This document shows, piece after piece, positions 7,448 to 63,139 of a stretch of DNA of 64,000 nt. Every line of letters starts with the position of its first letter. Position 1 is the stretch's first letter. A program made the position numbers and the translations under genes. The stretch covers positions 12,056,550 through 12,120,549 of the forward strand of contig NC_090404.1 in assembly GCF_036365525.1 (NCBI RefSeq), written 5' to 3'. Under the pieces are notes generated by a model. That model saw nothing but the letters and a program-made list of their open reading frames with translations. It searched no databases and had not been told where the DNA came from. Source of the stretch: Heterodontus francisci. Lineage: Eukaryota.

Positions 7448-7913
7448 ATGCGGCTACTCAGCATCTGGGTTGTGTGGGGAGCATTTCTGACAGGTAATTG
7501 TGGACAAAACACATTTCATCTTTTCTCTCGTTTCACAAACATGGTTTGAACCTGAATTTTCAACAACCGTCGGTCTGATCTTTTCCTGTTTAAACTTGTT
7601 TTTCAGATTTAAGTCATGGAGATTCTGTCACTCAGCCGCGTTCCCCAGATGTTAAGACAGAAGGAGAAGCGGTGATTTTAAGCTGTACCTATGATACGAC
7701 ACGGAGCGAGTATTCTTTATACTGGTACCAGCAACACCCAGATACACAGCCCGAGTTTATACTGAGGAAGGATTCTGATAATTATGAAGATAAAGCAGAT
7801 TTTGCTAAAAATCATTTCTCCGCTGAACTCCACACCGTGACTAAATTCACCAGTTTAACCATCTCAGGGCTGCAGCTGACTGACTCTGCCGTGTATTACT
7901 GCGCCTTCAGACT
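7448..7913 (+). CDS. TRAV/DV: TCR alpha/delta-type V gene segment, apparently functional (leader 7448-7493, intron, V exon 7607-7913)
   Basis: Leader MRLLSIWVVWGAFLT with GT at 7494; TTTCAG acceptor. Open V exon DLSHGDSVTQ...VILSCTYDT...LYWYQQHP...PEFIL...SLTISGLQLTDSAVYYCAFR with both Cys and the Trp; followed by a 23-RSS. Confidence 0.93.
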
Positions 7914-7952
7914 CACAGTGATGGAAAGCAGTCTCACCCCTGCACATAAACT
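7914..7952 (+). other. 23-bp spacer recombination signal sequence of the TCR V
   Basis: CACAGTG + 23 nt + ACATAAACT. Confidence 0.95.
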
Positions 7953-8176
7953 GCCTTTGGAGTGTGGGTGGGAGCTCTGGTCTGTTGGGGTCTGTGTAGA
8001 ATCGCAGGCAGATGTGCAGCGACAATGTGCCGCGCGCTGTCAGGCACTCAAACACACACCGAGAGGAAACCAAATTAACCTCGGATCAAACTGTCACCCA
8101 ACTGTTTCCAGGAACGGCCGAGAAATCAAACTACAGAATCCAATCAGACAGACAGATCCAGCACAGAAAACATATG

Positions 8177-8426
8177 TGAGGACCCCAGTTCTAATCCCCA
8201 GCCTCAATAATCTGCTGTCATGTCTCAGGATGCTCTCATCTCACTTCCTTGTGTCTCCAGTGGTGCTGTGAGACCAGTCGGTCGTCAGCTGGCTGTCAGT
8301 GAATGGAAACACCCCGAGCTGGGCTACAGTCAGAGTTCTGATAGGGAAATGGCTGCACATTTAGAGACCGGGGGTGGGAATGAAACCCTGGCCTGTTAAT
8401 TATCACCAACCTGCTCAGGATTGTTA
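8177..8426 (-). repeat. Inverted copy of 7160-7410 (V promoter region) downstream of the RSS
   Basis: AGCTGGCTGTCAGTGAATGGAAACACCCCGAGCTGGGCTACAGTCA is the exact reverse complement of 7255-7300; similarity extends over about 250 bp. Confidence 0.9.
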
Positions 8427-8624
8427 ATGGCGACAGAAAATATTCCATCATTAAGGAGACACCCTGAAGCACAATGGACATTAGAGGAACTCTGTGTTTT
8501 GCGCTTGTTTTAAACATCACAGACACTACCTTGTGAAATCTATTCATTGTGTACGAACTGTCTCTGAGTCAGCAACACGCTCTGATCAAAAAAACCCTGT
8601 GAACAGGCGGCGGTCAAAGACTCT

Positions 8625-13570: not shown

Positions 13571-13574
13571 TTAT

Positions 13575-14080: not shown

Positions 14081-14439
14081 GATACCCAGTGAGCAGACTT
14101 TTTACTCAGATCCCAGAGGCAGAAGCCTCAGACTGGTCCGGGAAGGAAACATTCGGGACACTGGCACTTGTCATAAGCTCCCACCCCGCTCCCCCTCCCC
14201 CACCCCCCCAACCGCCATAACCACCATGGATAAAGACAAGTGCTCTTGGACTCTTCCGCACCTGGAGCAAGTAGTCTGAGACACAGAAATCTCTTGTATG
14301 GTAGGTGAGGGGCTCTGGATTGGGCGGGGGAGGGGGCGGGGCGGAGCGTTTTGTGTGACTAGCCTCTGCTTTATGAGGGGAATTTAGGGTCAGATTGACA
14401 TCTGTCTGTGTATCTTTAAACTCTGTCTCACTCATAATG

Positions 14440-15490
14440 TACTGCAGAATATAAACAGAGGCAGCTCTGGTGAAGTAATAACTGAGATAGGGCCGAGAGT
14501 GGTAGAAAGGAGAAAAGATCTAATGCAATATAACAGAGGCATGACCTAGTTTAGTCATAACAAAAATAATCCTTAATATAGCATAAACAGATGCAGGTCT
14601 AATGCAGAAATTACTGAGACAGGCCCTACTATACTATAAGCAGATACTGGGTCTAGTGGAAAATAAGCAGCCAAATGGTCCAGTGCAGTCATAACTGAAA
14701 CAGGGTCTATTGTAATGTAAGGAGCGACAGAGTCAACTGTATTATGAACAGAGACATGGTCTTGTGCAGTAATAAGTGAGATTGGGCCAAGTGTAATAGG
14801 AACAGGGCAATGATCTGGTGCAGTATACCTGAGGCAGGGTCTGGTGTAATATAAACAGAGACAGGGTCTGGTGTAATATAAACAGAGACAGAGGCTAGAG
14901 CAATATAAACAGAGACAGGGTCCAGTGTAATATAAACAGGGGCCGGGTCTAGTGTAATATAAACAGAGACTGGGTCTAGTGTAATATAAACAGAGACTGG
15001 GTCTAGTGTAATATAAACAGAGACAGAGGCTAGAGCAATATAAACAGAGACAGGGTCTAGTGTAATGTAAACAGGGACAGAGGCTAGAGCAATATAAACA
15101 GAGACAGGGTCTGGTGTAATATAAACAGAGACAGGGTCTAGTGTAATATAAACAGGGGCCGGGTCTAATGTAATATAAACAGAGACAGGGTCTAGTGTAA
15201 TATAAACAGGGACAGATGCTAGAGCAATATAAACAGAGACAGTTTCCAATGTAATATAAACAGAGACAGGGTCTCGTGTAATATAAACAGGGACAGAGGC
15301 CAGAGCAATATAAACAGAGACAGGGTCTAGTGTAATATAAACAGGGACAGAGGCGAGAGCAATATAAACAGAGATAGGGTCCAGTGTAATATAAACAGAG
15401 ACAGTGTCCAGTGTAATATAAACAGAGACAGGGTCTAGTGTAATATAAACAGGGTCCTGGTCTAGAGTAATATAAACAGAGACAGAGTGT
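14440..15490 (+). repeat. 27-bp minisatellite (GTGTAATATAAACAGAGACAGGGTCTA)n
   Basis: Near-perfect tandem copies at 14840-15490, more decayed units to the left. Confidence 0.95.
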
Positions 15491-15660
15491 CTTCTTTGGC
15501 CTCCTTATCTCGAGAGACAATGGGTAAGCGCCTGCAGGAGGTCAGTGGTGTGTGGAGCAGAGCCTGGGGTGGCTATAAAGGCCAATTCTAGTGTGACAGA
15601 CTCTTCCACAGGTGCTGCAGAAAAATTTGTTTGTCTCTCAAGACAAGGAGGCCAAAGCAG
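15491..15660 (-). mobile_element. Short LINE 3'-end fragment (probably RTE-like) with inverted termini
   Basis: CTTTGGCCTCCTTATCTCGAGAGACAA ... TTGTCTCTCAAGACAAGGAGGCCAAAG form an inverted pair; family assignment is from memory only. Confidence 0.5.
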
Positions 15661-16055: not shown

Positions 16056-17124
16056 AGTTATTGTACGAGGCTGTAGCTCGTTCCCATCACTGAGAGACTC
16101 AGTGCACAGTAACAGACCGCGGTGTCAGACGGCCGCAGCTCCGAGATGGTCAATCGGTACAACTTGTCTGAATGCTGGACTGTATCAGAAAATTGGTTGT
16201 GAGCGAAATCCACCTCAAATTCAGCGCGGCTCTTGTCCCTCCGGACTGAAAACTCGGGCTGTCTGCCTGGGTGTTGTTGGTACCAGAATAAGTAATAACC
16301 ATCGTCGGGACAGATGCAGGTTAAAGTGACATCTTCTCCCTCTGTCTGTGTGAGCGAGGACTCCCGCTGACTGACAGAATCTCCATCTCTCAGATCTGGA
16401 ACACACGGTTAAAGAAAGGGGAAATCACCGATTAAAAGTTCAAAATAGACCGAACTGACGGTGAAAATTCTGTTAGTGTTTCATAAATTTAAATAGAATT
16501 TAAAGCATAGGTCATTCGGCCCAACTGGTCCATGCCAGGGTTCCCACTCCCCACGAGCATCCTCCACCCCTCTTCATCTCAGTCTATCAGCATATCCTTC
16601 CACCCCTTTCTCTCTCATCTGTTTATCTAGCTTCCCCTTAAATGCATCTCTGCTATTCACCATTCTCTGGATGAAGAATTTTGAATTCCCGAGTGGATCT
16701 TTTGGCGATTCTAATATTTATGACCCATTGTTTTGGTATCCTCTTCAAGTGGAAACATCTTCTCCAGTTCTACCTATTGAATACCTTGATAATTTTAAAG
16801 ACATCTATCAGATTGCCCTCAGTCTTCTCTTTACGAGAGGAAAGAGCCTCAGCTGGTATAGTGTTTTCTGATAGCTATTATTTCTCAATTCTGGCATCAT
16901 CCTTGTGAATCGTTTTTTGCATTTTTTCCCTACATCCTTGTTGTCATATGGCGACCAGAGCTGCTCACAATACTCCAATTGTGGTCTGACCAAGTTCGAC
17001 ACAATTTACCATGAACTCTGTTTTTTCAAATTTATTTCTGTCGAAATTAATCCCTTTTTAAAGTTTGGAATTTCTTATCGACAACGAATGTCACCCAGAG
17101 CCCAGCGAGAAGAGGGAGCCGTAT
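16056..17124 (-). pseudogene. TRAV/DV: TCR alpha/delta-type V pseudogene with open V exon (16095-16395) but dead leader (17079-17124) and mutated RSS heptamer
   Basis: V exon DLRDGDSVSQRESSLTQTEGEDVTLTCICPDDGYYLFWYQQHPGRQPEF...YRLTISELRPSDTAVCYCALS. RSS is CTCAGTG-23-ACAATAACT. The 46-nt leader homologue starts ATA and its donor reads AT instead of GT. A CR1 fragment sits in the intron. Confidence 0.88.
16500..17010 (-). mobile_element. CR1 LINE 3' fragment inside the V pseudogene intron
   Basis: LVRPQLEYCEQLWSPY...RFTRMMPEL and a CR1-type 3' UTR. Confidence 0.8.
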
Positions 17125-17193
17125 TGCTGCTGCTGCGGAATTCGAGGGACTTTCGACCTCTCAGAAATCTGGAGAACATGAAAAGAGCTGAGG

Positions 17194-19736: not shown

Positions 19737-20219
19737 AGGTTTTGTACAGGGTGCACACGGAACTGTGTAGCTGTGTGTCTCAGGGGACAGTAATATACGG
19801 CGCTGTCTGACAGCTCCGCCGCAGAAACAGTCAGCTGAACCGTACTCTCTTCTGTGCTCAACTCTGCTGTAAAACGGTCCATGGCGAAGTCGACTGGAAG
19901 GTATCATATTGGGTGATAAGCAACACGTTTCCCGGAGCCCGACCGGGAAGCTGCCAGTACCAGAAAAGATAAGGGTTTGTACTTGTTGTTTCAAAACTTC
20001 AATTCAGCATCACCGCTCCTTCTTCCCGCACTGTCTTGGTCGAATAGCCCTGATGAACCGAATCGCCGCCAACGCTGCTGGCTGAAAGAGAAATTAAACA
20101 TGAACAACTAACCGCCTCAATAACCAGACCTGTTAGTGTTTATTTATACACAGATTCTACATGTACTTACACAGCACAGAGAGGGCCCAAACCAGGCTGG
20201 AATAAATAAGGAAACACAT
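19737..20219 (-). pseudogene. TRAV/DV: TCR alpha/delta-type V pseudogene (leader 20171-20219, V exon 19776-20081, 23-RSS 19737-19775)
   Basis: Leader MCFLIYSSLVWALSVL|GTAAGT. Exon SSVGGDSVHQ...AVMLN*SFETTSTNPYLFWYWQLPG has the first Cys changed to TGA and a frameshift near CDR2, then DRFTAELS...SDSAVYYCPLR. RSS is CACAGCT-23-ACAAAACCT. Confidence 0.9.
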
Positions 20220-41139: not shown

Positions 41140-42781
41140 CCTGAAATATGTCACTGTGTGTCAGCCAGGTTATCCCACGCTTATAGTAGAAGTGGGTGCA
41201 TGGAGCTCACAGAATCTGCTTCAAGAAAATTGTGGTCAATCAGCACTTGAGTGCTAAACCTGCTGGTCATGGTTTAGTGCCTCCAGGCAAGTTCAATTAT
41301 GGTAATCAGCAATCAAGATCAAAATTGTCTGAACAATCCAGACATTCAAACAGAGGTATTTCACTAGCACAGTGCCCATTGAGACTCTGCTTTCACTCTT
41401 TCACCAAAATCACCCCCTAAGTGTATGTTATATATGTGTGCGTGTATGTGTACAAAACTCATCATGTTGTTTGCAATTCCACAAACATAAATAGTTAGCT
41501 CACCAATTATTTTCAGCATTTCATGATATTTAATTCAAAATGTAATTGCAGACCGAGGGTAATGAGCAGCTGCTCACCCGTCTTTGTGCTTTATTGTTAA
41601 GTGATCACCTCACCATCACAGAAGCTGCTGGTATATACCTCACATGTGTGATGATTTGTGCAAGTAATGGTAAAAATGAAACTACCTGTACCTAACGTGG
41701 TTAATAAATTTGTAAATGACTGATGTATAATTTCCCTCATTTGCAAAGGAATGAAACACTTGCTGCTTTCCAGTGAAATTTGCACCATTTTTGTTTCCAC
41801 AGACTTCACTTTTAGCCCGTTACCTTCAATATTTCCTTCCCGACGTCTTCCATTTTTGTATGGTTCAGTTCATTGACATCTGAGGCAAAACCTACCATGT
41901 TTTTGGAAGTGACATCGTTCAGTGGAATAAATAGAGACATGGCCTTGTGCAGCAATAATTGAGACATAGCCTAGCATAATATAGAAAGCAACATGGTCTA
42001 GTGTCATGCAAGTGGGACATGACCTCGTGTAGTAATAACTGAGCAAGGCCTAATGTATTAGAAACAGACAAATGGTCTCCTGCACTAATAACTACACAGT
42101 AAGCTGAGACAGGGCCTCGTGTGATAGAAACAAAGATAGGGTCCTATGTAGTAATAGGTGAGACAGGGCCTAGTGTAATATGAGCTGAAGCATGGTCTAG
42201 TGCTGTAATAACCTAAAATGGATCGTGTGCAATGTAAACAAAGAGATGGTCTAATGCAGTGCCAACTGAGATAATGTCAAGTGTAATATAAACGAGTGCA
42301 GTCATCAAGGAGGCAGTGCCTAGTGTAACATAAATAGAGACAGGGTCTAGTGAAATATCAACAGAGACTCTATTTCGTCGAGTACTAAATGAGGCAGGAT
42401 CTGGTGCAATAGAAATAGAGACATGGTTTAATAACTGAGAGAGGAGGTGCTGCAATATAAACAAATGGAATGAGATGTCTTCTAGTGCAGTCATAATTGA
42501 GACATAATCTTGTATAATATACTAAGAGGCACAATACTCGGCATTTAAAACTGAGACATTAGCATAATAACAACAACAGAAATAGAGTCGGGTGGAATAT
42601 AAACAGGATCTAGTGTAATGTAATGTAATATGTACTCCAAGACCATGTATATGTTCATATTACGTCAGGCCTGGTCTCAGTTCTCATTGCCACGAAGCCA
42701 TATACCACACGAGTAGATAAATAATGATAATGCTAAACCTTCAAAAAAAAAAACACCGGTCAGCCTCAGTTGGAGTAATGT

Positions 42782-46745: not shown

Positions 46746-47056
46746 NNNNNNNNNNNNNNNNNNNNNNNNNNNNNNNNNNNNNNNNNNNNNNNNNNNNNNN
46801 NNNNNNNNNNNNNNNNNNNNNNNNNNNNNNNNNNNNNNNNNNNNNNNNNNNNNNNNNNNNNNNNNNNNNNNNNNNNNNNNNNNNNNNNNNNNNNNNNNNN
46901 NNNNNNNNNNNNNNNNNNNNNNNNNNNNNNNNNNNNNNNNNNNNNNNNNNNNNNNNNNNNNNNNNNNNNNNNNNNNNNNNNNNNNNNNNNNNNNNNNNNN
47001 NNNNNNNNNNNNNNNNNNNNNNNNNNNNNNNNNNNNNNNNNNNNNNNNNNNNNNNN
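46746..47056. other. Assembly gap (311 N)
   Basis: Run of N. Confidence 1.
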
Positions 47057-49249: not shown

Positions 49250-49729
49250 ATGAGATCGGCGATTTCTCTCAGTCTGTTGCTGATTTTCTTATCCCGTGAG
49301 TAGTTTTTGCCAGCCGTGTCTTGCAATGTTACTGTCTCAGTGTTAGTCTCTCTCTGGAATGTTACAGAGTCAGGAATCATTTCACCAGGATTAATCCTCG
49401 GGGTTTTTGATATTTTTTTTACAGGTGTCCATTCGGATGTCGTGTTGACTCAGCCAGAGGCAGAGACCGGGAAACCCGGAGGCTCCCTGCGACTGACCTG
49501 CAAAACCAGCGGGTTCAATCTTGAATACAGCTATATGAGCTGGGTCCGACAGGTTCCCGGGAAGGGGCTGGAGTGGTTGGTCAGCTACATGTTTTCATCA
49601 GTTGACAATTACGCCCCAGGGATTCAGGATCGATTTACTGCGTCCAAAGACACTTCAAACAACATCTTCGCCTTGGACATGAAGAACCTGAAGACTGAAG
49701 ACACCGCCATGTATTACTGTGCAAGATAC
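49250..49729 (+). CDS. IGHV: Immunoglobulin heavy-chain VH segment of the IgM cluster, apparently functional (leader 49250-49295, V exon 49425-49729)
   Basis: Leader [15 protein letters not shown]|GTGAG; exon [52 protein letters not shown]...DTAMYYCAR; TATTTAAA about 100 bp upstream. Confidence 0.97.
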
Positions 49730-49768
49730 CACAGCGAGAGGAACCAGGGCTGGACCCGTACAAGTACA
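49730..49768 (+). other. VH 23-RSS
   Basis: CACAGCG + 23 nt + ACAAGTACA. Confidence 0.9.
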
Positions 49769-50142
49769 GATCGTGAGGGATTCGACAAATTCGGTCATAA
49801 CCTGACGGTCAGTAATTGTATTAAATATATTATTAATTGCTGCGGTCACAACCAGACCGTACACAAAACAGCACAGAGAAAATTCAATGGTACAAATCGA
49901 AGACACTAACACTGAGTAATTTTGCCTGTGCTCAATTTTAATGTTAACAGCATTAACAATGTTAACAATTGCAGACCTGGATAAGATGTTGATTTTAATG
50001 TGACTGATACCTGGAGGGAGTTACTTGGAGCTGTGTTCACTTCTGACCGCGTGGTGTAAACATTTGGATATGTTCTAAACTAGATCAGAAGTGAATTTCT
50101 GTTTGAAGTGAATGTTGACAGTACTGAACAGAGAGTGAGTGC

Positions 50143-50222
50143 AGTATTTGTGCGGGTTCGTGTCACGGTGGGTACTATGGGGGTCACGGTGCTGTACAGA
50201 GCGAGTTCCTCTTGCAAAATCC
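50143..50222 (+). other. DH1 segment (50171-50184, GGTACTATGGGGGT) with 5' 12-RSS and 3' 22-RSS
   Basis: AGTATTTGT-12-CACGGTG [D] CACGGTG-22-GCAAAATCC; matches the known shark D1 12/22 layout. Confidence 0.93.
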
Positions 50223-50535
50223 CCAGACACGGAGCTTGCTCAAAGCTGCGATCACTACCACGGCAGGAGGGTCGTAAACAATGAGAATTAAATAAAAATA
50301 ATGGATAAATATAATGCAGTTTGTGACAATGTATGAAAGTCCATTGCTTTATTAGTGTTGACTGTCATGCTAAATCAACATAGATTCTTCAGAAGTATTT
50401 CAATCCGCTTTAGAAATATAATGACCCGGAGCAATTGAATTATCTCACGGATGTACTCTTCGGTGAGTGGGAATCAGGTTTTTTAAGAGTGCTGTGGAAT
50501 TTAATCTCTGTATTTTACAGTTAACAGTCCGCCAC

Positions 50536-50601
50536 AGTATTTGACACGACGTGTCTCACTGTGTACTGGGTGGCACAGCAGTTACTGTCAATACAAAAAG
50601 C
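50536..50601 (+). other. DH2 segment (50564-50573, TACTGGGTGG) with 12/12 RSSs
   Basis: AGTATTTGA-12-CACTGTG [D] CACAGCA-12-ACAAAAAGC. Confidence 0.93.
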
Positions 50602-50927
50602 CGCTCAGCACTAATTGATGAACCTGGGTCACTGATCGTTTTTGCAGTCCAACTGTAGATGCAGCAAAAGTACTATTTGTGTCCAGCACTGTCCTACTAG
50701 CACGGTTTATTATGGATAAACTGATAATTATTCATTTGTCAGTTGGTGATTTCAATAATTACTGACATGTTACTGTGTGAAATATAAAACATCAGGGAAA
50801 TTTATGAAGAGTGAAAAGAATCATTAACACAGTTATAATTTTCTGAAGAACCATCATGATTTTATTTTGCCTCTGTGGTGTGGATATTTAAAATAATGCT
50901 GGATTTCTCTCTATTCTGTGCAGAGCC

Positions 50928-51014
50928 GGTTATTGTGTGACCCAGCCCAGGGAATATAACACTGTGACTATCTCGAGGACTGGGGTCAAGGGACCATGGT
51001 GACGGTGACTGCAG
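50928..51014 (+). CDS. IGHJ: JH segment (50967-51014) with 5' 23-RSS
   Basis: GGTTATTGT-23-CACTGTG, then YLEDWGQGTMVTVTA and a GT donor at 51015. Confidence 0.96.
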
Positions 51015-51113
51015 GTCAGAAAAATGAACGTATTCAGTAACTGATTTATTTGTGTTTTTATTTTATATTTCTGTTTATTTTAATGATACATTTATTCACT
51101 GAAATGTGGATTT

Positions 51114-52039
51114 GGTGGATTCTGTCTTGATATTTGTTGCAATGTTTCATTTGACTCTGCTGCAAAGGGATGAAAGAATTTAACGGTTTCTTCACAATCG
51201 GTTCTGTTGCGGGATTCAGCTCCAGATTGATGTGATTTGGTATTTATTTGCTGATGAGACTGTGTGTCTGGGCTACTTTAAATATCTAACTGTTGTTAAA
51301 CTTTTTGACGTTTCTGCAATGTTTAATCTTGGTGACATCTAGTCACTGCAGGTTTTCCGATCTAATACAAACAATAAGTGTTTAAATATGTTTGCAATAA
51401 AATTGTATGCAGAAAACGTCAGTGGTCAAAAATAGCCTTACGATATTTTGATCTATTTTTATTTGTGGCAATTAAATTGTCATTTATCAATCTACTGCTC
51501 ACGAATGCTCATATGTAATACATTAAATTTTGATGTAATTAAGAATGACATAAATAACAAATTTGCAGTTTTAGTCAGATTTACATTCATATAACCTCAC
51601 TCATTATACTTCGGTGATATCGGCCAATATTAATGAAATATGCTATAGTATCAAGATTAATTTATTAAACATGCTGTCTGTGCTGAAAATTCTGCTGCCA
51701 TTTTTATATATTTGCTGGTAAGTCAGACAGGCGGGCTCGGTGGATTCTGTATTGAGATTTGTTTGCAATGTTACGTTTGAGTCTGCTAAAGTTTTTGTCG
51801 AATTAAGCTACTTCTCTATGAAACGTATTGAGGCTGGATTCAGTTCCTCAGTGATGTGATTTGGTGTTTATCTGCTGAGGAGAGTGTGTGTCTGTGTTAC
51901 AAAGAAAAATTTGTGAAACTCTTTGGCATTGTTCTGCATTGTTTAATCTCGGTGACATTGAGCGGCTTCATGTTTTCTGATCGAATGCAAACATTCTACG
52001 TGTTTAAAACTGCTTGAAAGACGATTGCAGCTGGAAAAC
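51114..52039. repeat. Diverged ~300-bp direct duplication in the J-C intron (51114-51417 and 51739-52039)
   Basis: GGTGGATTCTGT, TTGCAATGTT, TGATGTGATTTGGT, GTTTAATCT.GGTGACAT are colinear in both copies. Confidence 0.8.
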
Positions 52040-54269
52040 TGGCAAGTTTCAGAAATGAGAAAAGAAAACATTGAAAGATATTTCAAGGCATTTTTTAAAT
52101 ATAAGTGATAATCGCAGATTAAACTATTAAGCCATGTTTACAACGCACGTTCAGTACGTGGAATGTAACTGCAATTACAAACTGCATAAGTAGCAGGTTT
52201 GCGGATTGGAGAGTCAAGTTAATGTAATTCAAACAAATGGAATGCGGCAGTATCTCCTCATTTAAACCAAATGTGCTTTAATATTAACATCGATTTATTA
52301 TTCATTAATTGCCTTTCAGAATTCTGGTGTGCCATGCGCACAATAATCATGACCAGAAAATGTTATGGGCTGGAGACAATTTTTAATTATGCTTGAAATT
52401 ATTTCAATCAGAGGGTACTTATTCCAATTTTCTGTTCAGTTTGATGTGCGCTTTTGAATTATTTTTTATATTCCTGTTTAAAACAGATGAATGACAGCTT
52501 TTATTTACTTATAACTTAAATAGGAGTTGTAAATTGCAGTTTGTCAATGTATTATCTCTGTCCGGTTATTACATTTTTTGCGTGAAGCCCAAACCATGTT
52601 CTTCCTTCAGTGTCAATTGTTGTTGGATAGCGAGAAAATGATCACTAATCAAATATTAACCATTTTCCCGAGACAAGAAGTCGCTGGTAGTCAAAGAATT
52701 GTTCATATGATTTTATTTAAATTGAAGAAACTTGTCGACTGCCCAAGGCGAGAGACAAACAAATAGCACGTTGAAATTCAAGTAGATTCAATTAATTTCA
52801 AATGGTTAATGTTCGTTTTGACTTCAATAACAACAACCTCTCTTTCTAGCTGTGCTGCACACAGGATAGAAATATAGACAAAGAACAGATTATACCCGAA
52901 AGTTACAATTCATTCTTATTAAGTATTAAATTGACCAACAAAATCTCGGCTACATTTGCTCACTAAGTTTCAGTGCCGCAGATGATCTGAAAGAATTGTT
53001 CTCGTCCAGTTTTGCAGTGATCATTTTGAAGTTTCTTTCAATAGAAGCACCATGTATTTAATAATTAATTTACAGGAATTTTGTAAATTACTGGAGTAAC
53101 ATATAAAAACATTGTGTGATTAAATAGTGGCAGCACAGTCACCGATCGTAAACTGCCTTGAGGAGAAATTATTGTTCAATTTAAATGATTGAACTGCGAT
53201 TCGATTTAAGTAGAAGTAATATATTTTATGCATGTTTGAATCTATTAATATGATATTTATTATTTAATATTGATTAAGTGTCACAATAATTTAATTAAAC
53301 CCCCCATTATTTCACAAGGCACCAGGCAGAAGCAGGTCTTGAATTAATATTAACTTTTAAAAAAGTATAAAATCAGCTAACATGAATATTAACCAAGAAT
53401 ATAATAATAGCGCTAATTCATTAAACTTAAATGACCTCCCACAATTGAGTAGTGTACTTGCCGGGATTCCAATGAGTGCAAAATCTCAAGGGTCGGAGAG
53501 AATTCTGAATAAATTAGAGAACAATGTATTTCTTACTCAGCTGTTCTTAGCTCGATGACGTGTCGCCGCAGATTTTAATGAATTAACTATGTGTAATGCT
53601 TCAATTTTTTTTGGTAACGTTTAAGTATGCAATTGTATCAAACCGGTGGGTAATCGGTTTGTAAGGTGTGTGCTTCCTGACTTGTTCAATTCTTATGCTG
53701 TCACTGAGTTCCTGTTACGGACATCAAATTCCTCCGAATGTGAATTGTTTTGATGAACACATTTTAAGTGGGACTACATCATATGTTTTTAAGATTACAG
53801 ACAAATAGGGAGAAACTGTTGAAGTGGAAGGGTGTTTTTGAAATGAATACCAGTTTATTTTCAAAGAGCTCACAGACTTGTATTGGTCTCAATTTGACAA
53901 TTGATAAATTAGAATCAAACATCTTCATTGAAGTTGACAGATTCAACAGATCTATCTGCTGAGAGCCCCATTGTTACACCATTAGTGCCTGTTCTGTTTC
54001 TGTGCGCCTGCTCACTGTGTGGAGATCAGTAATCCTCCCGACTGGTTGTAAACCTTCTGGTTCGTCCTCATGTATTTCATGAGTGCAATTTGATCCATTT
54101 ATTTAAGAAACTTGTACCTGTGAGAAAAACGAAATTTTGGCTTTAAGTCTGATGAGGCGCCTCCGCGATGAGATCTGTATTCCAGTCTGTGACAGTCAGA
54201 AATAGCAGTTCAGTGTCATGACAGACAGAATGTAGAAGGAGAATTGGTCAATTTGTAATCAGTAATGTC

Positions 54270-54660
54270 TCTCCCTTGGGAGCATTTGACTGCCAATGTC
54301 GAGGAAGCTTTGCTACATATTTAATCCAAGCTGTAACTGTCCTGGGATTGTTTGATGGGGACAGTGTCGAGAGAAAAAATACTCTGTATCGAAATCGGGT
54401 TGAACCTGTCCTGGATGTATTTGATGGGACAGGGTACAGGGAGCTTTATTTTATATTAAACTAGAGCTGTACCTGACCCAGAGCGATAGTGAAGTATAGA
54501 GGTGGCTTTCCATGGTAGATAACACTTGTGATGTCTGATCTTACAGCTCAGGATAGGGACGTACAGGGGGATCTTTACTTTACAATTTAACTGTCCTGTA
54601 CCTGTCCCGAAAGTTTTTTCCCCGCAGTGTTCAAGGATCCTCAATCTGCATCTAACTCAT
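54270..54660 (+). repeat. Degenerate ~70-bp shark satellite (TTTGATGGGACAGTGTAGAGGGAGCTTTACTCTGTATCTAA-type); inverted fragment at about 63955-64000
   Basis: Recurring TTTGATGGG(G)ACAG, GAGCTTTA and CTGTACCTG motifs. Confidence 0.65.
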
Positions 54661-55131
54661 GAGCTGTGAGTTCTCGAGCCAGACATATGAAAATAAATTG
54701 TTCCATTGCCCAGATGAAATAACGCACATGAATTGATTTTAACCATTCATGCAAGCCCAATTTTTAATGAATTAAAAATATTTAAACCTGTTAAGTATCA
54801 GATAATTATCGAATGAGATTGGCCTGATCTTGAGTGTACTTTCAGAAGAAAGAGTTTCAGGAAGCAGCTGTCGTGCCCCAGTTAGCAGCACCTGTTCTGA
54901 ACTGATGGGAGAATGGAAGTTCTTTTGGCACTTTAAATGGAAATAGTCGAGACTCCGGCTACAAATAACCATCATGATAATCTCATCTTTGAAATCATTA
55001 TTTCGTTCAAGTATTTTCAAAAGATAACAGGCAGTGATAAACTCTGATGAGATGCAGTAATTGGACTGGGTCACAACTGAGGGTACTTCCCACTAAAGTC
55101 AGCTTGTGTGAAACTATTGAAGTGATACTTT

Positions 55132-55445
55132 CGGCACGGTGGTGCGGTGGTTAGCACTGCAGCCTCATAGCTCCAGCGACCCGCGTTCAATTCTGGGTAC
55201 TGCTTGTGTGGAGTTTGTAAGTTCTCCCAGTGTCCGCGTGGGTTTTCGCCGGGTGCTCCGGTTTCCTCCCACAGCCGAAGACTTGCAGGTTTATCGGTAA
55301 ATTGGCCATTATAAATTGCCCCTAGTATAGGCAGGTGGTAGAAATATGGGCTTAGGGTAGGATTAATATAAATGATATTGATGTTCGGCGCAGACTTGGT
55401 GGGCCGAAGGCCCTGTTTCAGTGCTGTATCTCTGAATAATAAATG
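55132..55445 (+). mobile_element. V-SINE (HE1-like) in the J-C intron
   Basis: CGGCACGGTGGTGCGGTGGTTAGCACTGCAGCCTCA head, V-domain and shared tail. Confidence 0.9.
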
Positions 55446-55649
55446 ATACAGTTAGCCTGCAGTCAATGTCAATCACGATAAGCTTTAAGTCTCTGACAGT
55501 ATCTGATTGACTCAGTTGTAGTTTTTAAGATTAGTCGCTATTTTGGAGGGAGGGGGTTGTGCTGGGGATGGAGGGAGGGGGTGGAAGGGTGGGGGCAACA
55601 CAGCAGTCTACTTGCAAAGAGCAAATTTCCAAAACACTGCAATTGATAA

Positions 55650-56372
55650 ATGTTGAATGCTTTATTTTTTGAAAAGTGCTGCTGGTTTAGAAATAAATAC
55701 TGACCGGAATAGCGGCGAAACTCCACCTCCAGCTCACCACCACCTCCTCAAGGACAATTATGGACGGGCAATAAATGCTGACCTCGCCAGTGACGCCCAC
55801 ATCCCATGAATGAATAAAAGGCTCTTACTTTTGTAATGTTACAGGTCCTGTCAGAGAGGTGTGTTCCTCACCAGGGGACCGACAGGTGATGATCACCAAA
55901 TGATGGAGTTGCTAGAAGCTCCAATGCGGATGAAGGTTTTAATATTAGAATCAGTTTCTTGCTGGAGCCAAATTCCAACTTGTTTGGTTACTTGATAAGC
56001 ATGAATTACAGTGTCTAACTCGTTCAATTAATAAATGCAGAGTGTTTTTTTTTTGACAAAGTGCTCTTGGTTGAGAAATAAATACTGGCAGGAATAATGG
56101 GGAAACCCCTCTTCCATGTTAATCCAATGCAAGGTACTTTATTCAGGCGACGTCAAAAGGCTCCTACTTTTGTAATGTAACAGATCCTGAAAGAGAGGTG
56201 AATTCCTGACCTGGAGACCAACAGGTGATGATTCCCAATGATGTAAGTGGTAGAAGCTCAAATGCGGATGAAGATTTTAATTGGAAAATATTGGAATTAG
56301 TTTCTAGCTGGAGTCAAATTCCAAGTTGTTTGGTTACTTGATAAGCATGAATTACTGAGTCTAACTTGTTCA
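55650..56372. repeat. Tandem ~330-400-bp duplication immediately upstream of the Cmu1 acceptor
   Basis: AGAAATAAATACTG, CTTTTGTAATGT.ACAG, ACAGGTGATGAT, AATGCGGATGAAG and TGTTTGGTTACTTGATAAGCATGAATTAC each occur twice. Confidence 0.85.
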
Positions 56373-56391
56373 ATCTGCCATTCTTTCACAG

Positions 56392-56688
56392 CGACACCGT
56401 CTCCCCCAACCCTTTACGGCCTGTGCTCCTGTGAGCAACCCAACACCGACGGCTCCTTGGCCTACGGCTGTTTGGCAATGGATTACATCCCCCAAATCAC
56501 CAGCGTTTCCTGGAAGAAAGATAATGAGCCGATCACCACTGGATTGAAGACTTATCCGTCAGTGCTGAACAAGAAGGGAACCTACACCCAGAGCAGCCAG
56601 TTAACCATCACCGAGTCAGAGGTGGGAAGCAGCAAAATCTACTGCGAGGTTCGACGCGGAGAGTCGGTCTGGATCAAGGAAATTCCAG
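56392..56688 (+). CDS. IGHM: IgM constant exon Cmu1
   Basis: CACAG|, [32 protein letters not shown]...SWKK...[18 protein letters not shown], |GT; phase 1. Confidence 0.97.
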
Positions 56689-56899
56689 GTTAGTGTTGTG
56701 GAAACTGTGAAAAATAGAAAAGCTTTAATGATCTTATTTAGAGCTTTGGCTCTACCATATTCAGAGTACCGTGCACAGTTCTGATCCCTCTAAACTCCAG
56801 CTGGTGTCTGCTTGACAGCAAAGAAGCTGTTAAAATATAAGAACAGTTTGCATTAGTTATTAATTTCTTCTAAAAATGTCTAACGTGTTTTTCTTGAAG

Positions 56900-57217
56900 A
56901 TTGTAAAGGTGACAAGGTCCATCCAACTGTTATCCTCACCCAGAGTTCCAGTGAAGAAATCACAAGCAGAAGATTTGCAACTGTCTTGTGTTCAATCATC
57001 GATTTCCATCCAGAGTCAATAACCGTGAGTTGGTTGAAGGATGGACAACACATGGAATCGGGCTTCGTCACATCTCCCACCTGTGGAGTGAACGGGACCT
57101 TCTCGGCGACCAGTCGGCTGACAGTCCCCGCTAGGGAATGGTTCACCAACAAGGTCTATACCTGCCAGGTCTCCCATCAAGGGGTCACCCAAAGCCGAAA
57201 CATCACCGGATCTCAGG
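56900..57217 (+). CDS. IGHM: IgM constant exon Cmu2
   Basis: [49 protein letters not shown]...[20 protein letters not shown]|GTAAG. Confidence 0.97.
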
Positions 57218-58608
57218 GTAAGAGACTTAAACCAAAGAAGCTCCAGATCATTCTGTGCTCTGTTGTTAATCAAATAAAGGAATTTATAGGAACTCGTACA
57301 AAACACAGAATATTTTCTAATTTCCCATCATGCAGTTTGTATATTTCTTTCCGCTGTGAGTGCTGAATTAGGATTGCTCACGGTTCAACATGTCATCACA
57401 TCACATCAATAGTCCCCTCTGCCTAGATGCCATATAGTGAGTGAGGTGACCTTGATATCAGGTTTATTCTGAGCGGCATTAAGTAATGAGGACAGGTTTA
57501 TCAGACCTAACTGGTATTGCTTTCAGTATTAAAGATGAAAAGGGAATCTAACTGAGGTGTTTTAGTTGTTTATTGGAATTGATGGAGTCGATGGAGAAAA
57601 ACATTTCTTCGGGTGTGGGACTCCAGAACAAGTGGGTATAACCTACAAATTTGACCAAGATCATATAGGGATGATATCAGGAAGGAGCTATTCACACAAT
57701 GGGTAGCGCAAACCTAGAATTATCTCCCTCAACTCACTCTTGAAGTCTGGCATCAATTGAAACATTTAGTGTTGATATTGATAGATTGAAATTAGGCAAG
57801 GGAATAAGGGTAGACGGTGTTAAGATACAGATCAGCCATTGTCTAACAGAATGGTGGAACAGGCTCGAGGGGATGAATGGACTACTCTTTTTCTTCTGTT
57901 TTTATGATTGTCCTCTGGTCAGATCGCCCTCTGACTCCAGACGGACATATGAGGAGTTCTCACTCATGACAGATATTTGCAAAGTGCCTCAGACCGTTAT
58001 TGCAATTTATTCTCCACATCAAAAAGACTCCTGAGAATATTTTCACCACCTTTCACCCCTCCTGCGATTGGTTCCAACATATTCTCAACTCCTCAACTAT
58101 CGTGACAAGGCGCCAGAAAATTAACTTTTTTTTCCTGTTGGGCCAAAATTTCGGAATTTCGTTTGACACTCGTTTTGAGCCAGTGTGAATTACATGTCTA
58201 GCTTGTGCCCATGGGAGATAGAGCCATTATATTCAGCGGAGATACGAACATACTAATTAGGAGCAGGATTTGGTCACTCGGCCTCTCGAGCCGGCTCTGC
58301 CAGAGATTTCAGGAAGAACGTTATTCAGTGCGTAACACAAATTCTCCCACAATTATTCGTTTTTTACACCGCGTACTTGCTTCAAAGTCCATTACAGGCT
58401 TCTTAGGGTGCAAGTACACAGTATATGTTATAGGATCTCCAGGAAGCACTTTCAGGTTGTTGTCCTTCCAATAAACTATAATATTTTGAGCAACAGCTGG
58501 AGATTGATGTCTCGAAATTGATTTAATCTCCTAGAGACAGTGAAGGCTGAAAACTGGTGCCTGATTTTGAAGACGAATCTTTGTTTGCCTTTCATTTCTG
58601 TTTTACAG

Positions 58609-58917
58609 TTCCTTGCTCCTGCAATGATCCAGTAATTAAACTACTGCCACCATCAATAGAACAGGTCTTACTGGAGGCGACGGTGACCTTAAACTGCATC
58701 GTGTCTAATGCTCCTTATGGAGTCAATGTGTCCTGGACCCAAGAACAGAAGTCTTTGAAATCAGAGATTGCCGTCCAACCTGGAGAGGATGCAGACAGCG
58801 TGATCAGCACCGTAAACATCTCGACGCAAGCCTGGCTGAGTGGGGCTGAGTTCTACTGCGTGGTGAACCATCAGGATCTGCCGACTCCTCTCAGAGCATC
58901 CATCCACAAGGAAGAAG
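58609..58917 (+). CDS. IGHM: IgM constant exon Cmu3
   Basis: TTACAG|[32 protein letters not shown]...[22 protein letters not shown]|GTGAG. Confidence 0.97.
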
Positions 58918-59418
58918 GTGAGCGGTGAGATTGAAGCTATAAGTGAGATGTTGTGATCATTTCTTGCGTTTGTGCAAGGCCCAATTCGTCCTTTTAAGTG
59001 CTCACATGGATTATTCTGATAATTTAAGTGTAATTCCACTGAAAAAACCCCTCTGGAACCATAGGTAATGCATTTAAGGGGAAGCGAGATAAGTAGATGA
59101 GGGAGAAAGGAATAGAAGGAGATGAAGTAAGGCGGGAGGAGGTTTGTGTGCAGAGTAAGCAACAACACAGACTAGTTGGGCCGAATGACCAGTTTTTCTG
59201 CTGTAAAATCTATGTAATGTTCCAGTCTAATCCTTTAAATTCTCATCGAGAAGGATTGCATCCACCTCTGCTCCGGGCTGGAAAACAGGACTGAGCCCAG
59301 AGGGGAAAAGGAAACCTTTAAAATTCAGCGCAAAGCACATTCCTTTCACATGTAACCACCGGTTTCATTGTCTCTGGAATTCTCCAGTTTATTGACATTA
59401 ATTTTAATTTTTCTGCAG

Positions 59419-59810
59419 TTAAAGATCTGCGAGAACCGTCCGTGTCTATCCTCCTGTCCCCGGCAGAAGATGTCTCCGCTCAGAGGTTCCTCTCCCTCAC
59501 CTGCTTAGTGAGAGGTTTCTCCCCCCGAGAGATCTTCGTCAAGTGGACCATCAATGACAAGTCGGTGAATCCTGGCAACTACAAGAACACCGAGGTGATG
59601 GCAGAGAACGACAACAGCTCCTACTTCATCTACAGCCTGTTATCCATTGCAGCGGAGGAGTGGGCCAGCGGCGCTTCTTACTCCTGTGTGGTGGGACATG
59701 AAGCGATCCCCTTGAAGATCATCAACAGAACAGTTAATAAATCGAGCGGTAAACCCAGTTTTGTGAACATTTCCCTTGCACTGTTGGACACTGTCAATTC
59801 TTGTCAATGA
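59419..59810 (+). CDS. IGHM: IgM constant exon Cmu4 plus secretory tailpiece (internal donor after 59748 for the membrane form)
   Basis: [43 protein letters not shown]...[24 protein letters not shown]|[24 protein letters not shown], with NIS glycan site and penultimate Cys. Confidence 0.97.
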
Positions 59811-59838
59811 GAATCTCTCGATTGCATTTCAATTCTTA

Positions 59839-59854
59839 AATAAAAACCAATAAA
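59839..59854 (+). terminator. Polyadenylation signals for secreted mu mRNA
   Basis: Two AATAAA (59839-59844, 59849-59854) about 30-40 nt after the stop. Confidence 0.8.
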
Positions 59855-60929
59855 GACCTTTTATTCCAACCGCGATTTAAATACACAGCCACTCAATTAA
59901 TTTTGCTTCCCACATTTGCTAAGGGTAGATCTGTTCATGTAAAGTAGGATATTTGAAAAACACGGGCACAAGTCTGTAGAATGGTGCTCCAAGCTCAGAT
60001 ACACCACAGCTGAGCAACAAAGGAAGGGAATTCATTGCTGGATTCTGCAGAGTAACTTCAGCAACTTTCCCCCTCTGGGGGAGGTCCGAAATTTTCCCTT
60101 TTCTAACAAACAAACGCGGCGAATTGAGATTTTGGTGTTCCTGCTCCTCGTGTTGTCCATCCTTTCAGATTTGGGGCCAGTTTTAATTTGCAGCAGAGGA
60201 AAGACTGATCAGCCGAAGGGCCTGTTTCTGTGCTGTCTAACTCTGCGACTCCATGAATTGAGGACGACACACGAATACCAACAACACCCAAAATCCCCCA
60301 ACAGGAAGAGGGAAAAGGACAATTTATTAACTCACTGTAACCCCACTTCCTGAACAGAGAAAGGGAAAGGGCAGTTGTTAATCCACTGTAACTCCACTTC
60401 TCCAACAGAGAGAGGGCAGAGGGAGATGTGAACCGATTGCAGCCCTCACTCAATTCCTCCAATAGATAAACGAGCAAGGACATTTTTTAACCCACTAGAC
60501 TCTCACTCCTCCGGCAGAGAGCTTGGAAGGCAACTGCTCTCTATTATATGGACTCAGTTGTCATCAGTACAAAGTCAGCTTCTAGCTGACTGTGCGAGCA
60601 TTTTAAACTTTCTACACGGAAACCATCTTGTAAAACATATATGTATGCAACATAATATCTTTAAACTTTTCCCTGTTAATCTTGTTGAAACAGATTGAAT
60701 TCTAACAGTCCAATTCTAACCAGTGATATAATCCTCCTCTGTTTTTTCATACTTGTGCTCCTGATGTTTATGAGGCCCATCAGTTGCATTGCTGCATGCA
60801 TGCAGATGATGTCATATTGCATCTCTCACAAAATACATTTACACAGAATAGTGAAGAATGTTCTCGACAATGCACACTGTCAAGGCCAGACCTGGTTATT
60901 GGTTCTCTGTGAAACTTTGAAGAATAATA

Positions 60930-62280
60930 AAAACACACAGGCACACGGACACAAACACACACATAAACACACTCACATACACCTACACACTGGAACAGAC
61001 ACAAATGCTGATATATAGGCTCCCACAATCACACACATAAACATAAACATAACGACGCACCGTAGTACAGTCTCACGTACACAGAAACATAGACATAAAA
61101 GCACACACATGGATTCACCATTGACACACATACATGGGCGTATATATTAGCACATTAGCAAACTGGCAAACATGCACCCAAACATGTCGATAGATAGACA
61201 CATTAACACACAAATAAACACCAACATTAATATACTGACACACTCACTCACACACAAATAAACACCAACATTAATGTAAATAAATGCAAGATACTGCAGA
61301 TGCTGGAAATCAGAAATAAAAACAAGAAATGCTGGAAACACACAGCAGGTCTGGCAGCATCTGTGGAGAGAGAAGCAGAGTTATCGTTTCAGAACAGTAA
61401 CCCTTCATCAGAACTGGCAAATATTAGAAATGTAAAAGGTTTTAAACAAGTAAAGTAGGGGTGGGGCAAGGATAACAAAAGAGAAGGTGTTGATAGGACA
61501 AAGTCACAGAGAATAACTGACCAGAAGGCCACAGTTTGCCTTTGATCCTTTTATATTTTAAACGTTTGCATTTCTAATATTTGCCAGTTCTGATGAAGGG
61601 TAACTAACCAAGCTTAATGTACTTACACACTCACTCACAGCATCAACAGCAACTTAAGATACTGACACATTCACTCACACAGAAATAAACACCAACATTA
61701 ATATACTGACACACACATGGATAAACAAACACGCACATAAACACATACATTCGCACACATGTACAAATAATCATACATGAACACACGCATTAATGCATAA
61801 ATGTAAACATTAACACACACACGCACATTATCACACTTATGGAGGTACCAACACATGTAAACAAACACATTAACAAACCCAGATCGACACATTGACACAT
61901 AAAATCGGATTAACTTACAGGGACACATAAAGATCCATCAACACAGAAACACAGGTTAACAAACTCACACATAAATAAATATTGACACACTCATACAAAA
62001 CATGGACAGATAGGCACAACACACACACAAGCACACACAGCCGCATACACACATGCGGTCATTTGAATACACATATCTATGCACATTGGCACAGCCATCA
62101 ACATATAAACTAGAACATTAATACAGTCGCACTTGAATATATAAACGAACAAATAAACACACTCATTAACACTCACACGCAAGCACACATGGATACACAC
62201 ACACAGAGTAATGCAAAGCAAGAGATACTGATACACACACACAGAAGCAATAAAGCGCACAGACAAAAACACTAGACTAT
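60930..62280. repeat. CA-rich low-complexity region containing an inverted Penelope pLTR fragment (about 61282-61606)
   Basis: (CA)n-derived sequence; CAGCAGGTCTGGCAGCATCTGTGGAGAGAGAAGCAGAG and inverted CCCTTCATCAGAACTGGCAAATATTAGAAATG / CATTTCTAATATTTGCCAGTTCTGATGAAGGG. Confidence 0.8.
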
Positions 62281-62856
62281 AGACGAAAGCAGAATTCAAA
62301 TGCAATATTTGAACAGACAACGTCCCCAACAATTTCCTTGATACATGTTGGACTTTCAATCGCAATAAAGCAATGTTCTCAGTTAGAAACTGCGATCAAT
62401 TAATGATTTACTAACCACTCTCATCACAAATAAACAAACAAGATTGGAATTCACATTCGATCTCTTACCCAGCACCATTGACAATCTCCAAACAAGTAGT
62501 TATCTGAATCTATCTTCACAATAATTGTTATCGATCAGCAAACCTCCCTCGGTATCTCACCATAATTGCTAAGGATAGAACGAAATTGATCCAAAATAAA
62601 AGCGCTTGACACTGAAGGAAAAACTGACATATTTTCCAATATGACCTGGACGAGGATCATAAAGAAAGAACGACTGTGGCGTTACTAACAGAGATTGATT
62701 GCTGAATGTGATTAATCTAACAATAGATATAGATTTAAAATTAAATTCGGGAGCAAAATCATGGGTTAAGGAAGAGAAATGCGAATGCAAACTAACAATC
62801 TTATATCCTGCTTTAATAAATAATCTAAATATATTTCCTCCTCTACATCACTGTAG

Positions 62857-62984
62857 ATTCCTCAGACCACATCTGGATTGAAGACAATGAGCAAGAGAGC
62901 GGCAGCGTCTGGACAACAGCTTCTACATTCATCATCCTGTTCTTCCTGAGCATTTTCTACAGTGCTGCCGTCACTCTGGTGAAG
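62857..62984 (+). CDS. IGHM: IgM transmembrane exon TM1
   Basis: TGTAG|DSSDHIWIEDNEQESGSVWTTASTFIILFFLSIFYSAAVTLVK|GTGAG; CART motif; phase compatible with the Cmu4 internal donor. Confidence 0.96.
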
Positions 62985-63130
62985 GTGAGAAGATTCAAAC
63001 CACTCACACTTCAATTTGACTGAAGCTGTTTAGTAAATCTCTAAAACTTTCATCGATTTAAAAAAAAACTCTGAGATGAAATTCCCAGACCACGAAATCT
63101 CTGCTTCATTCTTTTATCCCTCTTTTACAG

Positions 63131-63139
63131 GTCAAGTGA
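63131..63139 (+). CDS. IGHM: IgM exon TM2 (VK-stop, giving the KVK cytoplasmic tail)
   Basis: TCTTTTACAG|GTC AAG TGA. Confidence 0.93.
   Translation, partial: VK

What the first reader, a model, noticed from the sequence alone, without database searches (positions are those of the whole stretch)
7448..63139. Intact TCR V positioned to recombine into a complete IgM cluster (possible TCR-V/IgM chimeric heavy chain)
Seen: a functional-looking TCR alpha/delta V with a consensus-heptamer 23-RSS (CACAGTG-23-ACATAAACT) lies on the same strand, about 42 kb upstream of DH1/DH2, whose 5' RSSs have 12-nt spacers. Its RSS is at least as close to consensus as the VH's own (CACAGCG-23-ACAAGTACA). I found no TCR D, J or C in the sequenced part of the window. 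Established: sharks make IgH-V/TCR-delta chimeric receptors, and the 12/23 rule permits this join. Inference: a deletional join would give the reciprocal product, TCRV-DH-JH-Cmu, an antibody or BCR heavy chain with a TCR V domain. I do not know of this being described as a regular product. Caveat: a 311-N gap lies between the two parts.
Basis: partly seen in the sequence, partly recalled or inferred. Interest (0 to 1): 0.8.

Follow-up and report, generated by a model that had tools for sequence, protein, structure and literature searches.

The report
Shark TCR V gene upstream of IgM cluster
An intact horn-shark T-cell-receptor V gene does lie about 42 kb upstream of a complete IgM antibody gene cluster, but this mixed layout was published for other sharks in 2025, and nothing I could test shows the two are ever joined into an antibody with a T-cell-receptor V domain.

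Summary
Observation confirmed, with corrections. An intact TCR alpha/delta-type V gene (leader 7448-7493, V exon 7607-7913, RSS CACAGTG-23-ACATAAACT) lies on the + strand. It is 42.3 kb upstream of D1 of a complete unrearranged IgM minicluster (49251-63139), whose RSS pattern is VH-23 | 12-D1-22/23 | 12-D2-12 | 23-JH. The 12/23 rule therefore permits a TCR V to D1 or D2 join.

The 311-N gap lies in retroelement spacer; I could not test contiguity across it.

The genome is Heterodontus francisci. TCR alpha/delta-type V exons between IgH clusters were already reported for four other elasmobranchs (Flajnik et al. 2025, PMC12227049). This scan has also noted the same pattern at many other places in this genome.

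V genes of this family occur joined to D-J-C of TCR delta in other elasmobranchs. RNA contigs show that this V or near-identical paralogs are transcribed and spliced, partly as germline read-through RNA. They do not reveal any rearrangement partner.

In nurse shark, IgH rearrangement stays within a minicluster (PMC2435157). The TCRV-Cmu chimera is therefore permitted but unsupported: about 4% as a regular product, perhaps 30% as a rare by-product.

The parts
7177..7415 (.). Left arm of an inverted repeat; covers the promoter and 5'UTR region of the TCR V gene
   Evidence: 84-89% match to 8172-8408, inverted; RNA contigs begin at 7269-7357
7448..7493 (+). [quoted passage not shown]
   Evidence: the splice joint 7493>7607 (GT..AG) is seen in RNA contigs
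7607..7913 (+). V exon, open, V-set domain with ..LSCTY..LYWYQQ..DSAVYYCAFR
   Evidence: (PF07686, E 4e-15)
7914..7952 (+). 23-spacer RSS, CACAGTG-23-ACATAAACT
8172..8408 (.). Right arm of the inverted repeat, beyond the RSS
16056..16395 (-). Second TCR-type V. The exon is open (47% identical to V1). The heptamer is CTCAGTG (CAC lost), with a 23-nt spacer and nonamer ACAATAACT. No leader or promoter homolog was found; a retroelement tail sits in the leader intron.
   Evidence: (V-set, E 1e-10)
19737..20219 (-). Third TCR-type V, a pseudogene. The leader is present. There is a TGA at 20001-19999 in place of the Cys23 codon, plus a frameshift. RSS is CACAGCT-23-ACAAAACCT.
46746..47056 (.). Assembly gap (N) within retroelement-rich spacer; not filled, continuity untested
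49251..49298 (+). IgM VH leader exon ([15 protein letters not shown]..)
49425..49768 (+). VH exon (to 49729) and its RSS CACAGCG-23-ACAAGTACA
   Evidence: V-set, E 2e-15
50143..50222 (+). D1 (50171-50184, GGTACTATGGGGGT) with a 5' 12-RSS and a 3' 22/23-RSS
50536..50601 (+). D2 (50564-50573, TACTGGGTGG) with a 5' 12-RSS and a 3' 12-RSS
50928..51014 (+). JH (50967-51014, ..DWGQGTMVTVTA) with a 5' 23-RSS
56392..56690 (+). Cmu1 exon
   Evidence: C1-set
56900..57217 (+). Cmu2 exon
58609..58917 (+). Cmu3 exon
59419..59810 (+). Cmu4 exon with secretory tail and stop
62857..62984 (+). TM1 exon (DSSDHIWIEDNEQESGSVWTTASTFIILFFLSIFYSAAVTLVK)
   Evidence: read directly
63131..63139 (+). TM2 exon (VK, stop)

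Best explanation
This is a stretch of the horn shark (Heterodontus francisci) antigen-receptor complex, in which IgM miniclusters are interspersed with TCR alpha/delta-type V segments.

The + strand V at 7448-7952 is an ordinary, intact germline TCR alpha/delta V gene. It is transcribed from its own promoter, and its leader intron is spliced. Its 23-RSS serves (inferred) long-range joining to TCR D-delta or J-alpha segments that lie outside this window.

The IgM cluster at 49251-63139 is an ordinary, unrearranged, apparently functional minicluster. By analogy with nurse shark, it assembles VH-D1-D2-JH within itself.

The adjacency reflects common descent and segmental duplication of the region. 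It is the same physical linkage that explains the known VH-to-TCR-delta transrearrangements. The reverse join, TCR V into DH, is allowed by the 12/23 rule. At most it would be a rare by-product, most plausibly in thymocytes, where both kinds of segment are open to RAG.
For: - Anatomy and RSS pattern.
- V-set and C1-set domains.
- Species: an NCBI H. francisci protein is 98% identical to the V (P0016).
- V family used in TCR delta: P0001 (68% identical V with the same leader pattern) continues into D-J and a C region. That C region is identical to the one in the two-V NAR-TCR proteins P0006 and P0012. P0020 is a full V-D-J-C-TM chain with a closely similar FR3.
- Best single-domain PDB matches are TCR alpha, then TCR delta, V domains.
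- The RSS, including its spacer, is conserved in bamboo-shark read-through models (TVM..SL.P..KLP).
- RNA contigs: the leader intron is spliced out. One 1250-nt contig of a ~98% paralog runs through the RSS, so it is a germline transcript.
[quoted passage not shown] - Only 1 of the 3 TCR-type V segments here is intact and co-oriented with the cluster.
Against: - No transcript or DNA junction of this exact V with any TCR J or C was seen. Logan contigs stop at the V end.
- The position and orientation of the TCR D/J/C segments relative to this window are unknown.
- Several near-identical paralogs exist, so expression of this particular copy is not proven.
- The within-cluster rule comes from nurse shark, where miniloci are at least 120 kb apart. 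It was established with VH- and cluster-specific primers, which could not have detected a TCR V joined to DH.
Confidence: 0.78

Rival explanations
1. One reading: the TCR V regularly recombines by deletion into D1 or D2 of the downstream IgM cluster. This would yield a functional TCRV-D-JH-Cmu heavy chain expressed by B cells.
For: The V is on the same strand and upstream. The 23/12 RSS pairing is compatible. The TCR V RSS is closer to consensus than the VH RSS. The V family is transcribed. A neighbouring window is noted to repeat the V-then-cluster arrangement (unchecked note).
Against: - No junction evidence.
- The family's known partners are TCR delta D-J-C.
- VH sits 441 bp from D1, against 42 kb for the TCR V.
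- Nurse shark IgH rearranges only within the minilocus.
- Two of the three TCR V segments in the spacer are dead and inverted, and earlier scan notes report mostly dead TCR V segments beside other clusters.
- FR2 is of the VL/V-alpha type (WYQQ), not the VH type (WVRQ), so pairing with a light chain is uncertain (inference).
Confidence: 0.04
2. Hybrid TCRV-DH joints do form, but only as rare, mostly non-productive by-products. The most likely place is thymocytes, where TCR V segments are open and IgH miniclusters are partially rearranged but not transcribed.
For: In nurse shark, most IgH loci are partially rearranged in every thymocyte while no Ig transcripts are detected. Rare aberrant Ig V-to-TCR rearrangement cDNAs are also mentioned (PMC2435157). 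VH-to-TCR-delta transrearrangements are common in sharks (PMC12227049). RSS compatibility is shown here.
Against: Nothing was observed directly. Distance and unknown chromatin topology may prevent synapsis.
Confidence: 0.3
3. The V is a stranded orphon. It is transcribed as a sterile germline RNA but no longer rearranges to anything.
For: A read-through germline contig and an NCBI model of a paralog (L+V+RSS+tail) exist. The window holds no TCR D, J or C. Its neighbours are decaying V segments.
Against: The exon, splice sites and RSS are perfectly kept, and several near-identical copies are kept as well. RSS conservation with bamboo shark points the same way. In run X3, contigs over the 3' end of the V exon carry the window's letter at 7896, while the only contig just past the RSS is of the paralog type. 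This hints at rearranged use, but contig depth is a poor measure.
Confidence: 0.12
4. The adjacency is an assembly artefact: the N gap at 46746-47056 hides a misjoin, so the V and the cluster are not neighbours.
For: There is a gap of estimated length inside repeat-rich DNA. Nothing in the window bridges it.
Against: The same interleaving is published for four species. It is noted at many other places in this genome, including the stretch just downstream (unchecked notes). A bamboo-shark gene model joins a V of this family to a VH-like exon on one strand (P0019).
Confidence: 0.08

Closest known systems
Elasmobranch antigen-receptor complex (AgRC): IgM/IgW/IgNAR clusters linked to TCR alpha/delta (Flajnik et al., Sci Adv 2025, PMC12227049)
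   Same: IgH miniclusters with TCR alpha/delta-type V exons lying between them, and the V(D)JC of each cluster kept together. This is exactly the layout seen here.
   Different: [quoted passage not shown] It discusses VH-to-TCR-delta joins only and does not raise TCR V-to-IgM joins.
IgH V to TCR delta (and alpha) transrearrangements in nurse shark (Criscitiello et al. 2010, as cited in PMC12227049 and PMC6795676; the paper itself was not held)
   Same: RAG-mediated joining across the Ig/TCR boundary within one linkage group, permitted by a V 23-RSS and a D 12-RSS.
   Different: The known products are VH-D(delta)-J(delta)-C(delta), expressed in T cells. The proposal here is the mirror image (TCR V with Cmu), for which I found no report.
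Shark IgM minicluster recombination (Malecek et al., PLoS Biol 2008, PMC2435157)
   Same: A VH-D1-D2-JH-Cmu unit with segments about 400 bp apart, as in this window.
   Different: That work found recombination only within a minilocus. Its primers targeted VH and the VH leader intron, so TCR V-to-DH joins were outside its view.
TAILV / VH-delta segments and NAR-TCR (Ig-type V segments used by TCR delta)
   Same: They show that the V pools of Ig and TCR delta mix in cartilaginous fish.
   Different: In those cases Ig-like V segments serve a TCR constant region. Here the V is a plain TCR alpha/delta type (29% identical to the neighbouring VH), and no Ig use of it is shown.

Membership tests
Germline TCR alpha/delta V gene segment | Leader exon, short intron and V exon with intact splice sites | tested here: met
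   the 7493>7607 GT..AG joint is seen in RNA contigs
Germline TCR alpha/delta V gene segment | Open V-set domain with Cys23, Trp41 and the YYC motif | tested here: met
   (PF07686, 56 bits); translation
Germline TCR alpha/delta V gene segment | 3' RSS with a 23-nt spacer | tested here: met
Germline TCR alpha/delta V gene segment | Closest relatives are V segments found joined to TCR alpha/delta J-C | tested here: met
   P0001 and P0020 carry TCR delta-type J-C. That C region is identified through the NAR-TCR proteins P0006 and P0012. Best single-domain PDB hits are TCR alpha and delta.
Germline TCR alpha/delta V gene segment | This very copy is seen rearranged to a TCR J or D | not testable with these tools
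   Logan contigs end at the V border and there is no loose end at 7913.
Elasmobranch IgM minicluster | [quoted passage not shown] | tested here: met
   (the D1 3' spacer is 22 or 23, depending on nonamer register)
Elasmobranch IgM minicluster | Four C1-set Cmu exons, a secretory tail and two TM exons, all open | tested here: met
AgRC layout (TCR alpha/delta-type V exons between IgH clusters) | A TCR-type V lies within tens of kb of an IgH cluster on one scaffold | tested here: met
   subject to the untested N gap
Ig/TCR chimeric receptor (transrearrangement product) | RSS compatibility of the V of one locus with the D or J of the other | tested here: met
   V 23-RSS against the 12-RSSs 5' of D1 and D2
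Ig/TCR chimeric receptor (transrearrangement product) | A hybrid V-D-J-C junction observed in cDNA or lymphocyte DNA | tested here: inconclusive
   The RNA contigs laid on the V show no junction at all, with either a TCR or an Ig partner. There were no raw reads and no second call.

The most novel reading that the evidence does not exclude
Horn shark B cells regularly use TCR alpha/delta-type V genes that sit upstream of IgM miniclusters. Deletional joining to D1 or D2 would give IgM heavy chains whose antigen-binding domain is a TCR V. This would be the mirror image of the known VH-TCR-delta chimeras.
Probability: 0.04. Interest if true: 0.85.

Novelty: new member of a known kind. Interest (0 to 1): 0.3.

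Why it matters
As it stands, the window adds the horn shark, the species in which shark Ig gene clusters were first described, to the list of elasmobranchs whose IgM clusters are interleaved with TCR alpha/delta V genes. It gives base-level coordinates for one intact, co-oriented V-and-cluster pair.

That pair makes a sharp experiment possible: PCR from a V-leader primer to a JH or Cmu1 primer. The experiment asks whether the Ig/TCR boundary is leaky in both directions.

A positive result at real frequency would change how the separation of the B- and T-cell receptor repertoires is understood in the oldest jawed vertebrates. A negative result would show that the boundary is enforced by something other than RSS compatibility, such as distance, chromatin domains or lineage factors.

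Tried and rejected
1. RNA test of the chimera. The look-up of sequencing runs gave only three runs from one sample, kept as contigs. Laying them on 6900-8500 showed splicing and read-through, but no junction partner. Both caps are now used, so the gap could not also be examined with reads.
3. Criscitiello 2010 (PMC3222143), Ott 2021 (PMC7909615), Deiss 2019 (PMC7039070) and Hsu 2016 (PMC4874517) are not held. I therefore could not check whether the reciprocal product was ever looked for. The reviews I read mention only VH-to-TCR-delta joins.
4. Self-BLAST of the gap flanks found no element spanning the gap.
5. A weak tblastn hit of the TCR delta C N-terminus at 21858-21778 is a common repeat, not a C exon.
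6. A 'VpreB-like' reading was rejected. It was prompted by NCBI's name 'immunoglobulin iota chain-like' for the paralog model P0016. The 120-codon tail after the RSS is not conserved in sawfish or bamboo-shark models, and one expressed copy has a 10-nt deletion inside it.
7. The loose end at 8168 in run X3 is not a splice. There is no GT donor, and the loose sequence is absent from the window.
8. The octamer ATGCAAAT is absent from both V promoters, which is uninformative.
9. The large representative protein search was not run. A TCRV-Cmu chain would cluster with ordinary IgM chains and stay invisible, so the cost was not justified.
Full report
**What is there.**

The TCR-type V gene has these parts:
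- An ATG at 7448 and a 46-nt leader exon.
- A GT..AG intron at 7494-7606.
- An open V exon at 7607-7913, ending ..DSAVYYCAFR.
- A consensus heptamer, a 23-nt spacer and the nonamer ACATAAACT at 7914-7952.

Pfam calls the exon a V-set domain.

The IgM cluster on the same strand is complete and unrearranged:
- Leader at 49251.
- VH exon 49425-49729 with RSS CACAGCG-23-ACAAGTACA.
- D1 50171-50184 (12-RSS on the 5' side, 22/23-RSS on the 3' side).
- D2 50564-50573 (12-RSS on both sides).
- JH 50967-51014 (23-RSS).
- Four open C1-set Cmu exons, the secretory tail, and TM1 (62857-62984) and TM2 (63131-63139).

The TCR V RSS matches consensus at 7/7 and 7/9. The VH RSS matches at 6/7 and 6/9.

A window-wide RSS scan found only these RSSs. 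A J-motif scan and tblastn with TCR delta chains found no TCR J or C. One weak hit at 21858-21778 is a repeat.

tblastn with the V exon found two more TCR-type V segments in the spacer, both on the minus strand.
- One (16395-16095) has an open exon and is 47% identical. Its heptamer is CTCAGTG, so the essential CAC is lost. No leader or promoter homolog was found.
- The other (20219-19776) has TGA where the Cys23 codon should be, plus a frameshift.

Only one of the three TCR-type V segments here is intact and co-oriented with the cluster. The rest of the 41-kb spacer is retroelement debris: a SCAN-like gag, RNase H, a LINE reverse transcriptase and a GIY-YIG element.

**The gap.**

The N run at 46746-47056 lies in this spacer and touches no exon, so the question of reading frame does not arise.

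I could not test continuity. The single run search returned only RNA contigs. I did not try to fill it. The 42-kb same-strand relation therefore rests on the scaffold.

The general pattern does not rest on this gap, as the next sections show.

**Whose genome, and is the layout new?**

The protein search returned an NCBI Heterodontus francisci model that is 98% identical to the V. It lies on a 59.5-Mb contig (P0016). The window is therefore horn shark, as earlier scan notes said.

Flajnik et al. [quoted passage not shown] They use this to explain VH-to-TCR-delta transrearrangements. They do not mention the reverse join.

The scan's own notes list the same interleaving at many other places on this chromosome, mostly with dead V segments. 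They also note a near-copy of this V about 13 kb past the window's end (unchecked notes).

**What kind of V it is, and what its family is used for.**

- The V is 29% identical to the neighbouring VH. Its FR2 is of the VL/V-alpha type (WYQQ).
- Its best single-domain matches among solved structures are TCR alpha chains, then V-delta 1 and V-delta 3.
- Its nearest relatives (62-68% identical) are bamboo-shark V models. Their read-through translations keep the RSS-encoded TVM..SL.P..KLP, so the RSS and its spacer are conserved.
- P0001 has the same leader pattern and a 68% identical V. It continues through a long D-containing CDR3 and a J (LIFGAGTQLTVEP) into a C region, ..QKSIVKPKLSAFYPPKSSSKDAVQAAVCLAS.
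- The same C follows the second V in the two-V proteins P0006 and P0012. These have the NAR-TCR architecture, so this is a TCR delta C.
- P0020 is a complete V-D-J-C-TM chain with a closely similar FR3.
- P0005 has a short CDR3 of the alpha-J kind.

The family's demonstrated partners are therefore TCR delta and probably TCR alpha.

**Expression.**

Three runs from one sample hold parts of the V exon. Laid on 6900-8500, they show the leader intron removed exactly at 7493/7607, so they contain RNA.
- One 1250-nt contig is about 2% different from the window, so it comes from a paralog. It is spliced and then runs straight through the RSS to beyond 8500. That makes it a germline (sterile) transcript.
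- NCBI's 236-aa model P0016 is the same kind of read-through product from another near-identical copy.
- Other contigs match the window's leader exactly. Over the 3' end of the V exon they carry the window's letter at 7896. The only contig just past the RSS is of the paralog type.
- That pattern would fit rearranged use, but contig depth and paralog sharing make it weak.
- No contig carries a junction, so the partner, TCR or Ig, is not shown.

**Likelihood of the proposed chimera.**

For it: the geometry, the RSS compatibility, the good RSS and an active promoter.

Against it:
- VH is 441 bp from D1. The TCR V is 42 kb away.
[quoted passage not shown] Those assays used VH-side primers, however, and could not have seen a TCR V.
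- The V family is known with TCR delta.
- Most TCR V segments beside IgM clusters, including two of the three here, are decaying and variably oriented. That is not what selection for a V-to-cluster partnership would leave.

The same paper shows that IgH miniloci are partially rearranged in nearly every thymocyte without being transcribed. If hybrid TCRV-DH joints form, the thymus is the likeliest place, and they would mostly be silent.

I put a regular functional product at about 4% and rare by-product joints at about 30%.

**Limits.**

- Exons were searched one by one.
- Four key papers were not held, so I cannot say whether anyone has looked for the reciprocal product. My recollection that it has not been reported is memory only.
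- The large representative search was not run.

**Verdict.**

The layout is a further example of a pattern published in 2025. The chimeric heavy chain remains an allowed but unsupported idea that a simple PCR or 5'RACE could settle.

Noticed in passing
window 7177-7415 and 8172-8408: An inverted repeat (84% over 239 nt; core of 175 nt at 89%) brackets the intact TCR V. The left arm is the promoter/5'UTR. The right arm lies beyond the RSS, so only the germline read-through RNA carries both arms and could fold back on itself. A rearranged transcript would lose the right arm. Another reader of this scan has already noted it.
   Followed up: partly
window 7609-8271: The V reading frame stays open for 120 codons past the RSS. 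NCBI models the same read-through ORF of a paralog as 'immunoglobulin iota chain-like' (P0016, 236 aa). The tail is not conserved in sawfish or bamboo-shark models, and one expressed copy has a 10-nt deletion at 8236. It is most likely a fortuitous ORF.
   Followed up: partly
protein P0019 (Chiloscyllium plagiosum gene model): This gene model joins a TCR V exon of this family directly to a VH-like exon (..EVILSQPETETGIPGQSLKLTCKTNGF..WYRQSPGNGL..). It suggests that the same-strand neighbourhood of TCR V followed by an Ig-type V also exists in a bamboo shark. The second V has a TCR-like WYRQ in FR2 and may be one of the 'intermediate' V segments of the 2025 paper.
   Followed up: no
window 8168 (run X3): One RNA contig follows the window up to 8168, then continues for 255 nt of sequence that is absent from the window. 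It diverges exactly where the right inverted-repeat arm begins. This is probably a paralog that lacks the inverted duplication.
   Followed up: partly
window 14573-15520, 37274-38602, 39715-40173, 42213-42494: Long tandem arrays give repetitive ORFs (..CLCLYYTRP.. and ..DPVSVYITL..) on the minus strand, recurring at four places in the spacer. They look like satellite-like repeats and were not characterised.
   Followed up: no
window 60900-62300: An A/C-rich, microsatellite-like tract (ACACACA.. / CACATA..) of about 1.4 kb fills most of the intron between Cmu4 and TM1.
   Followed up: no
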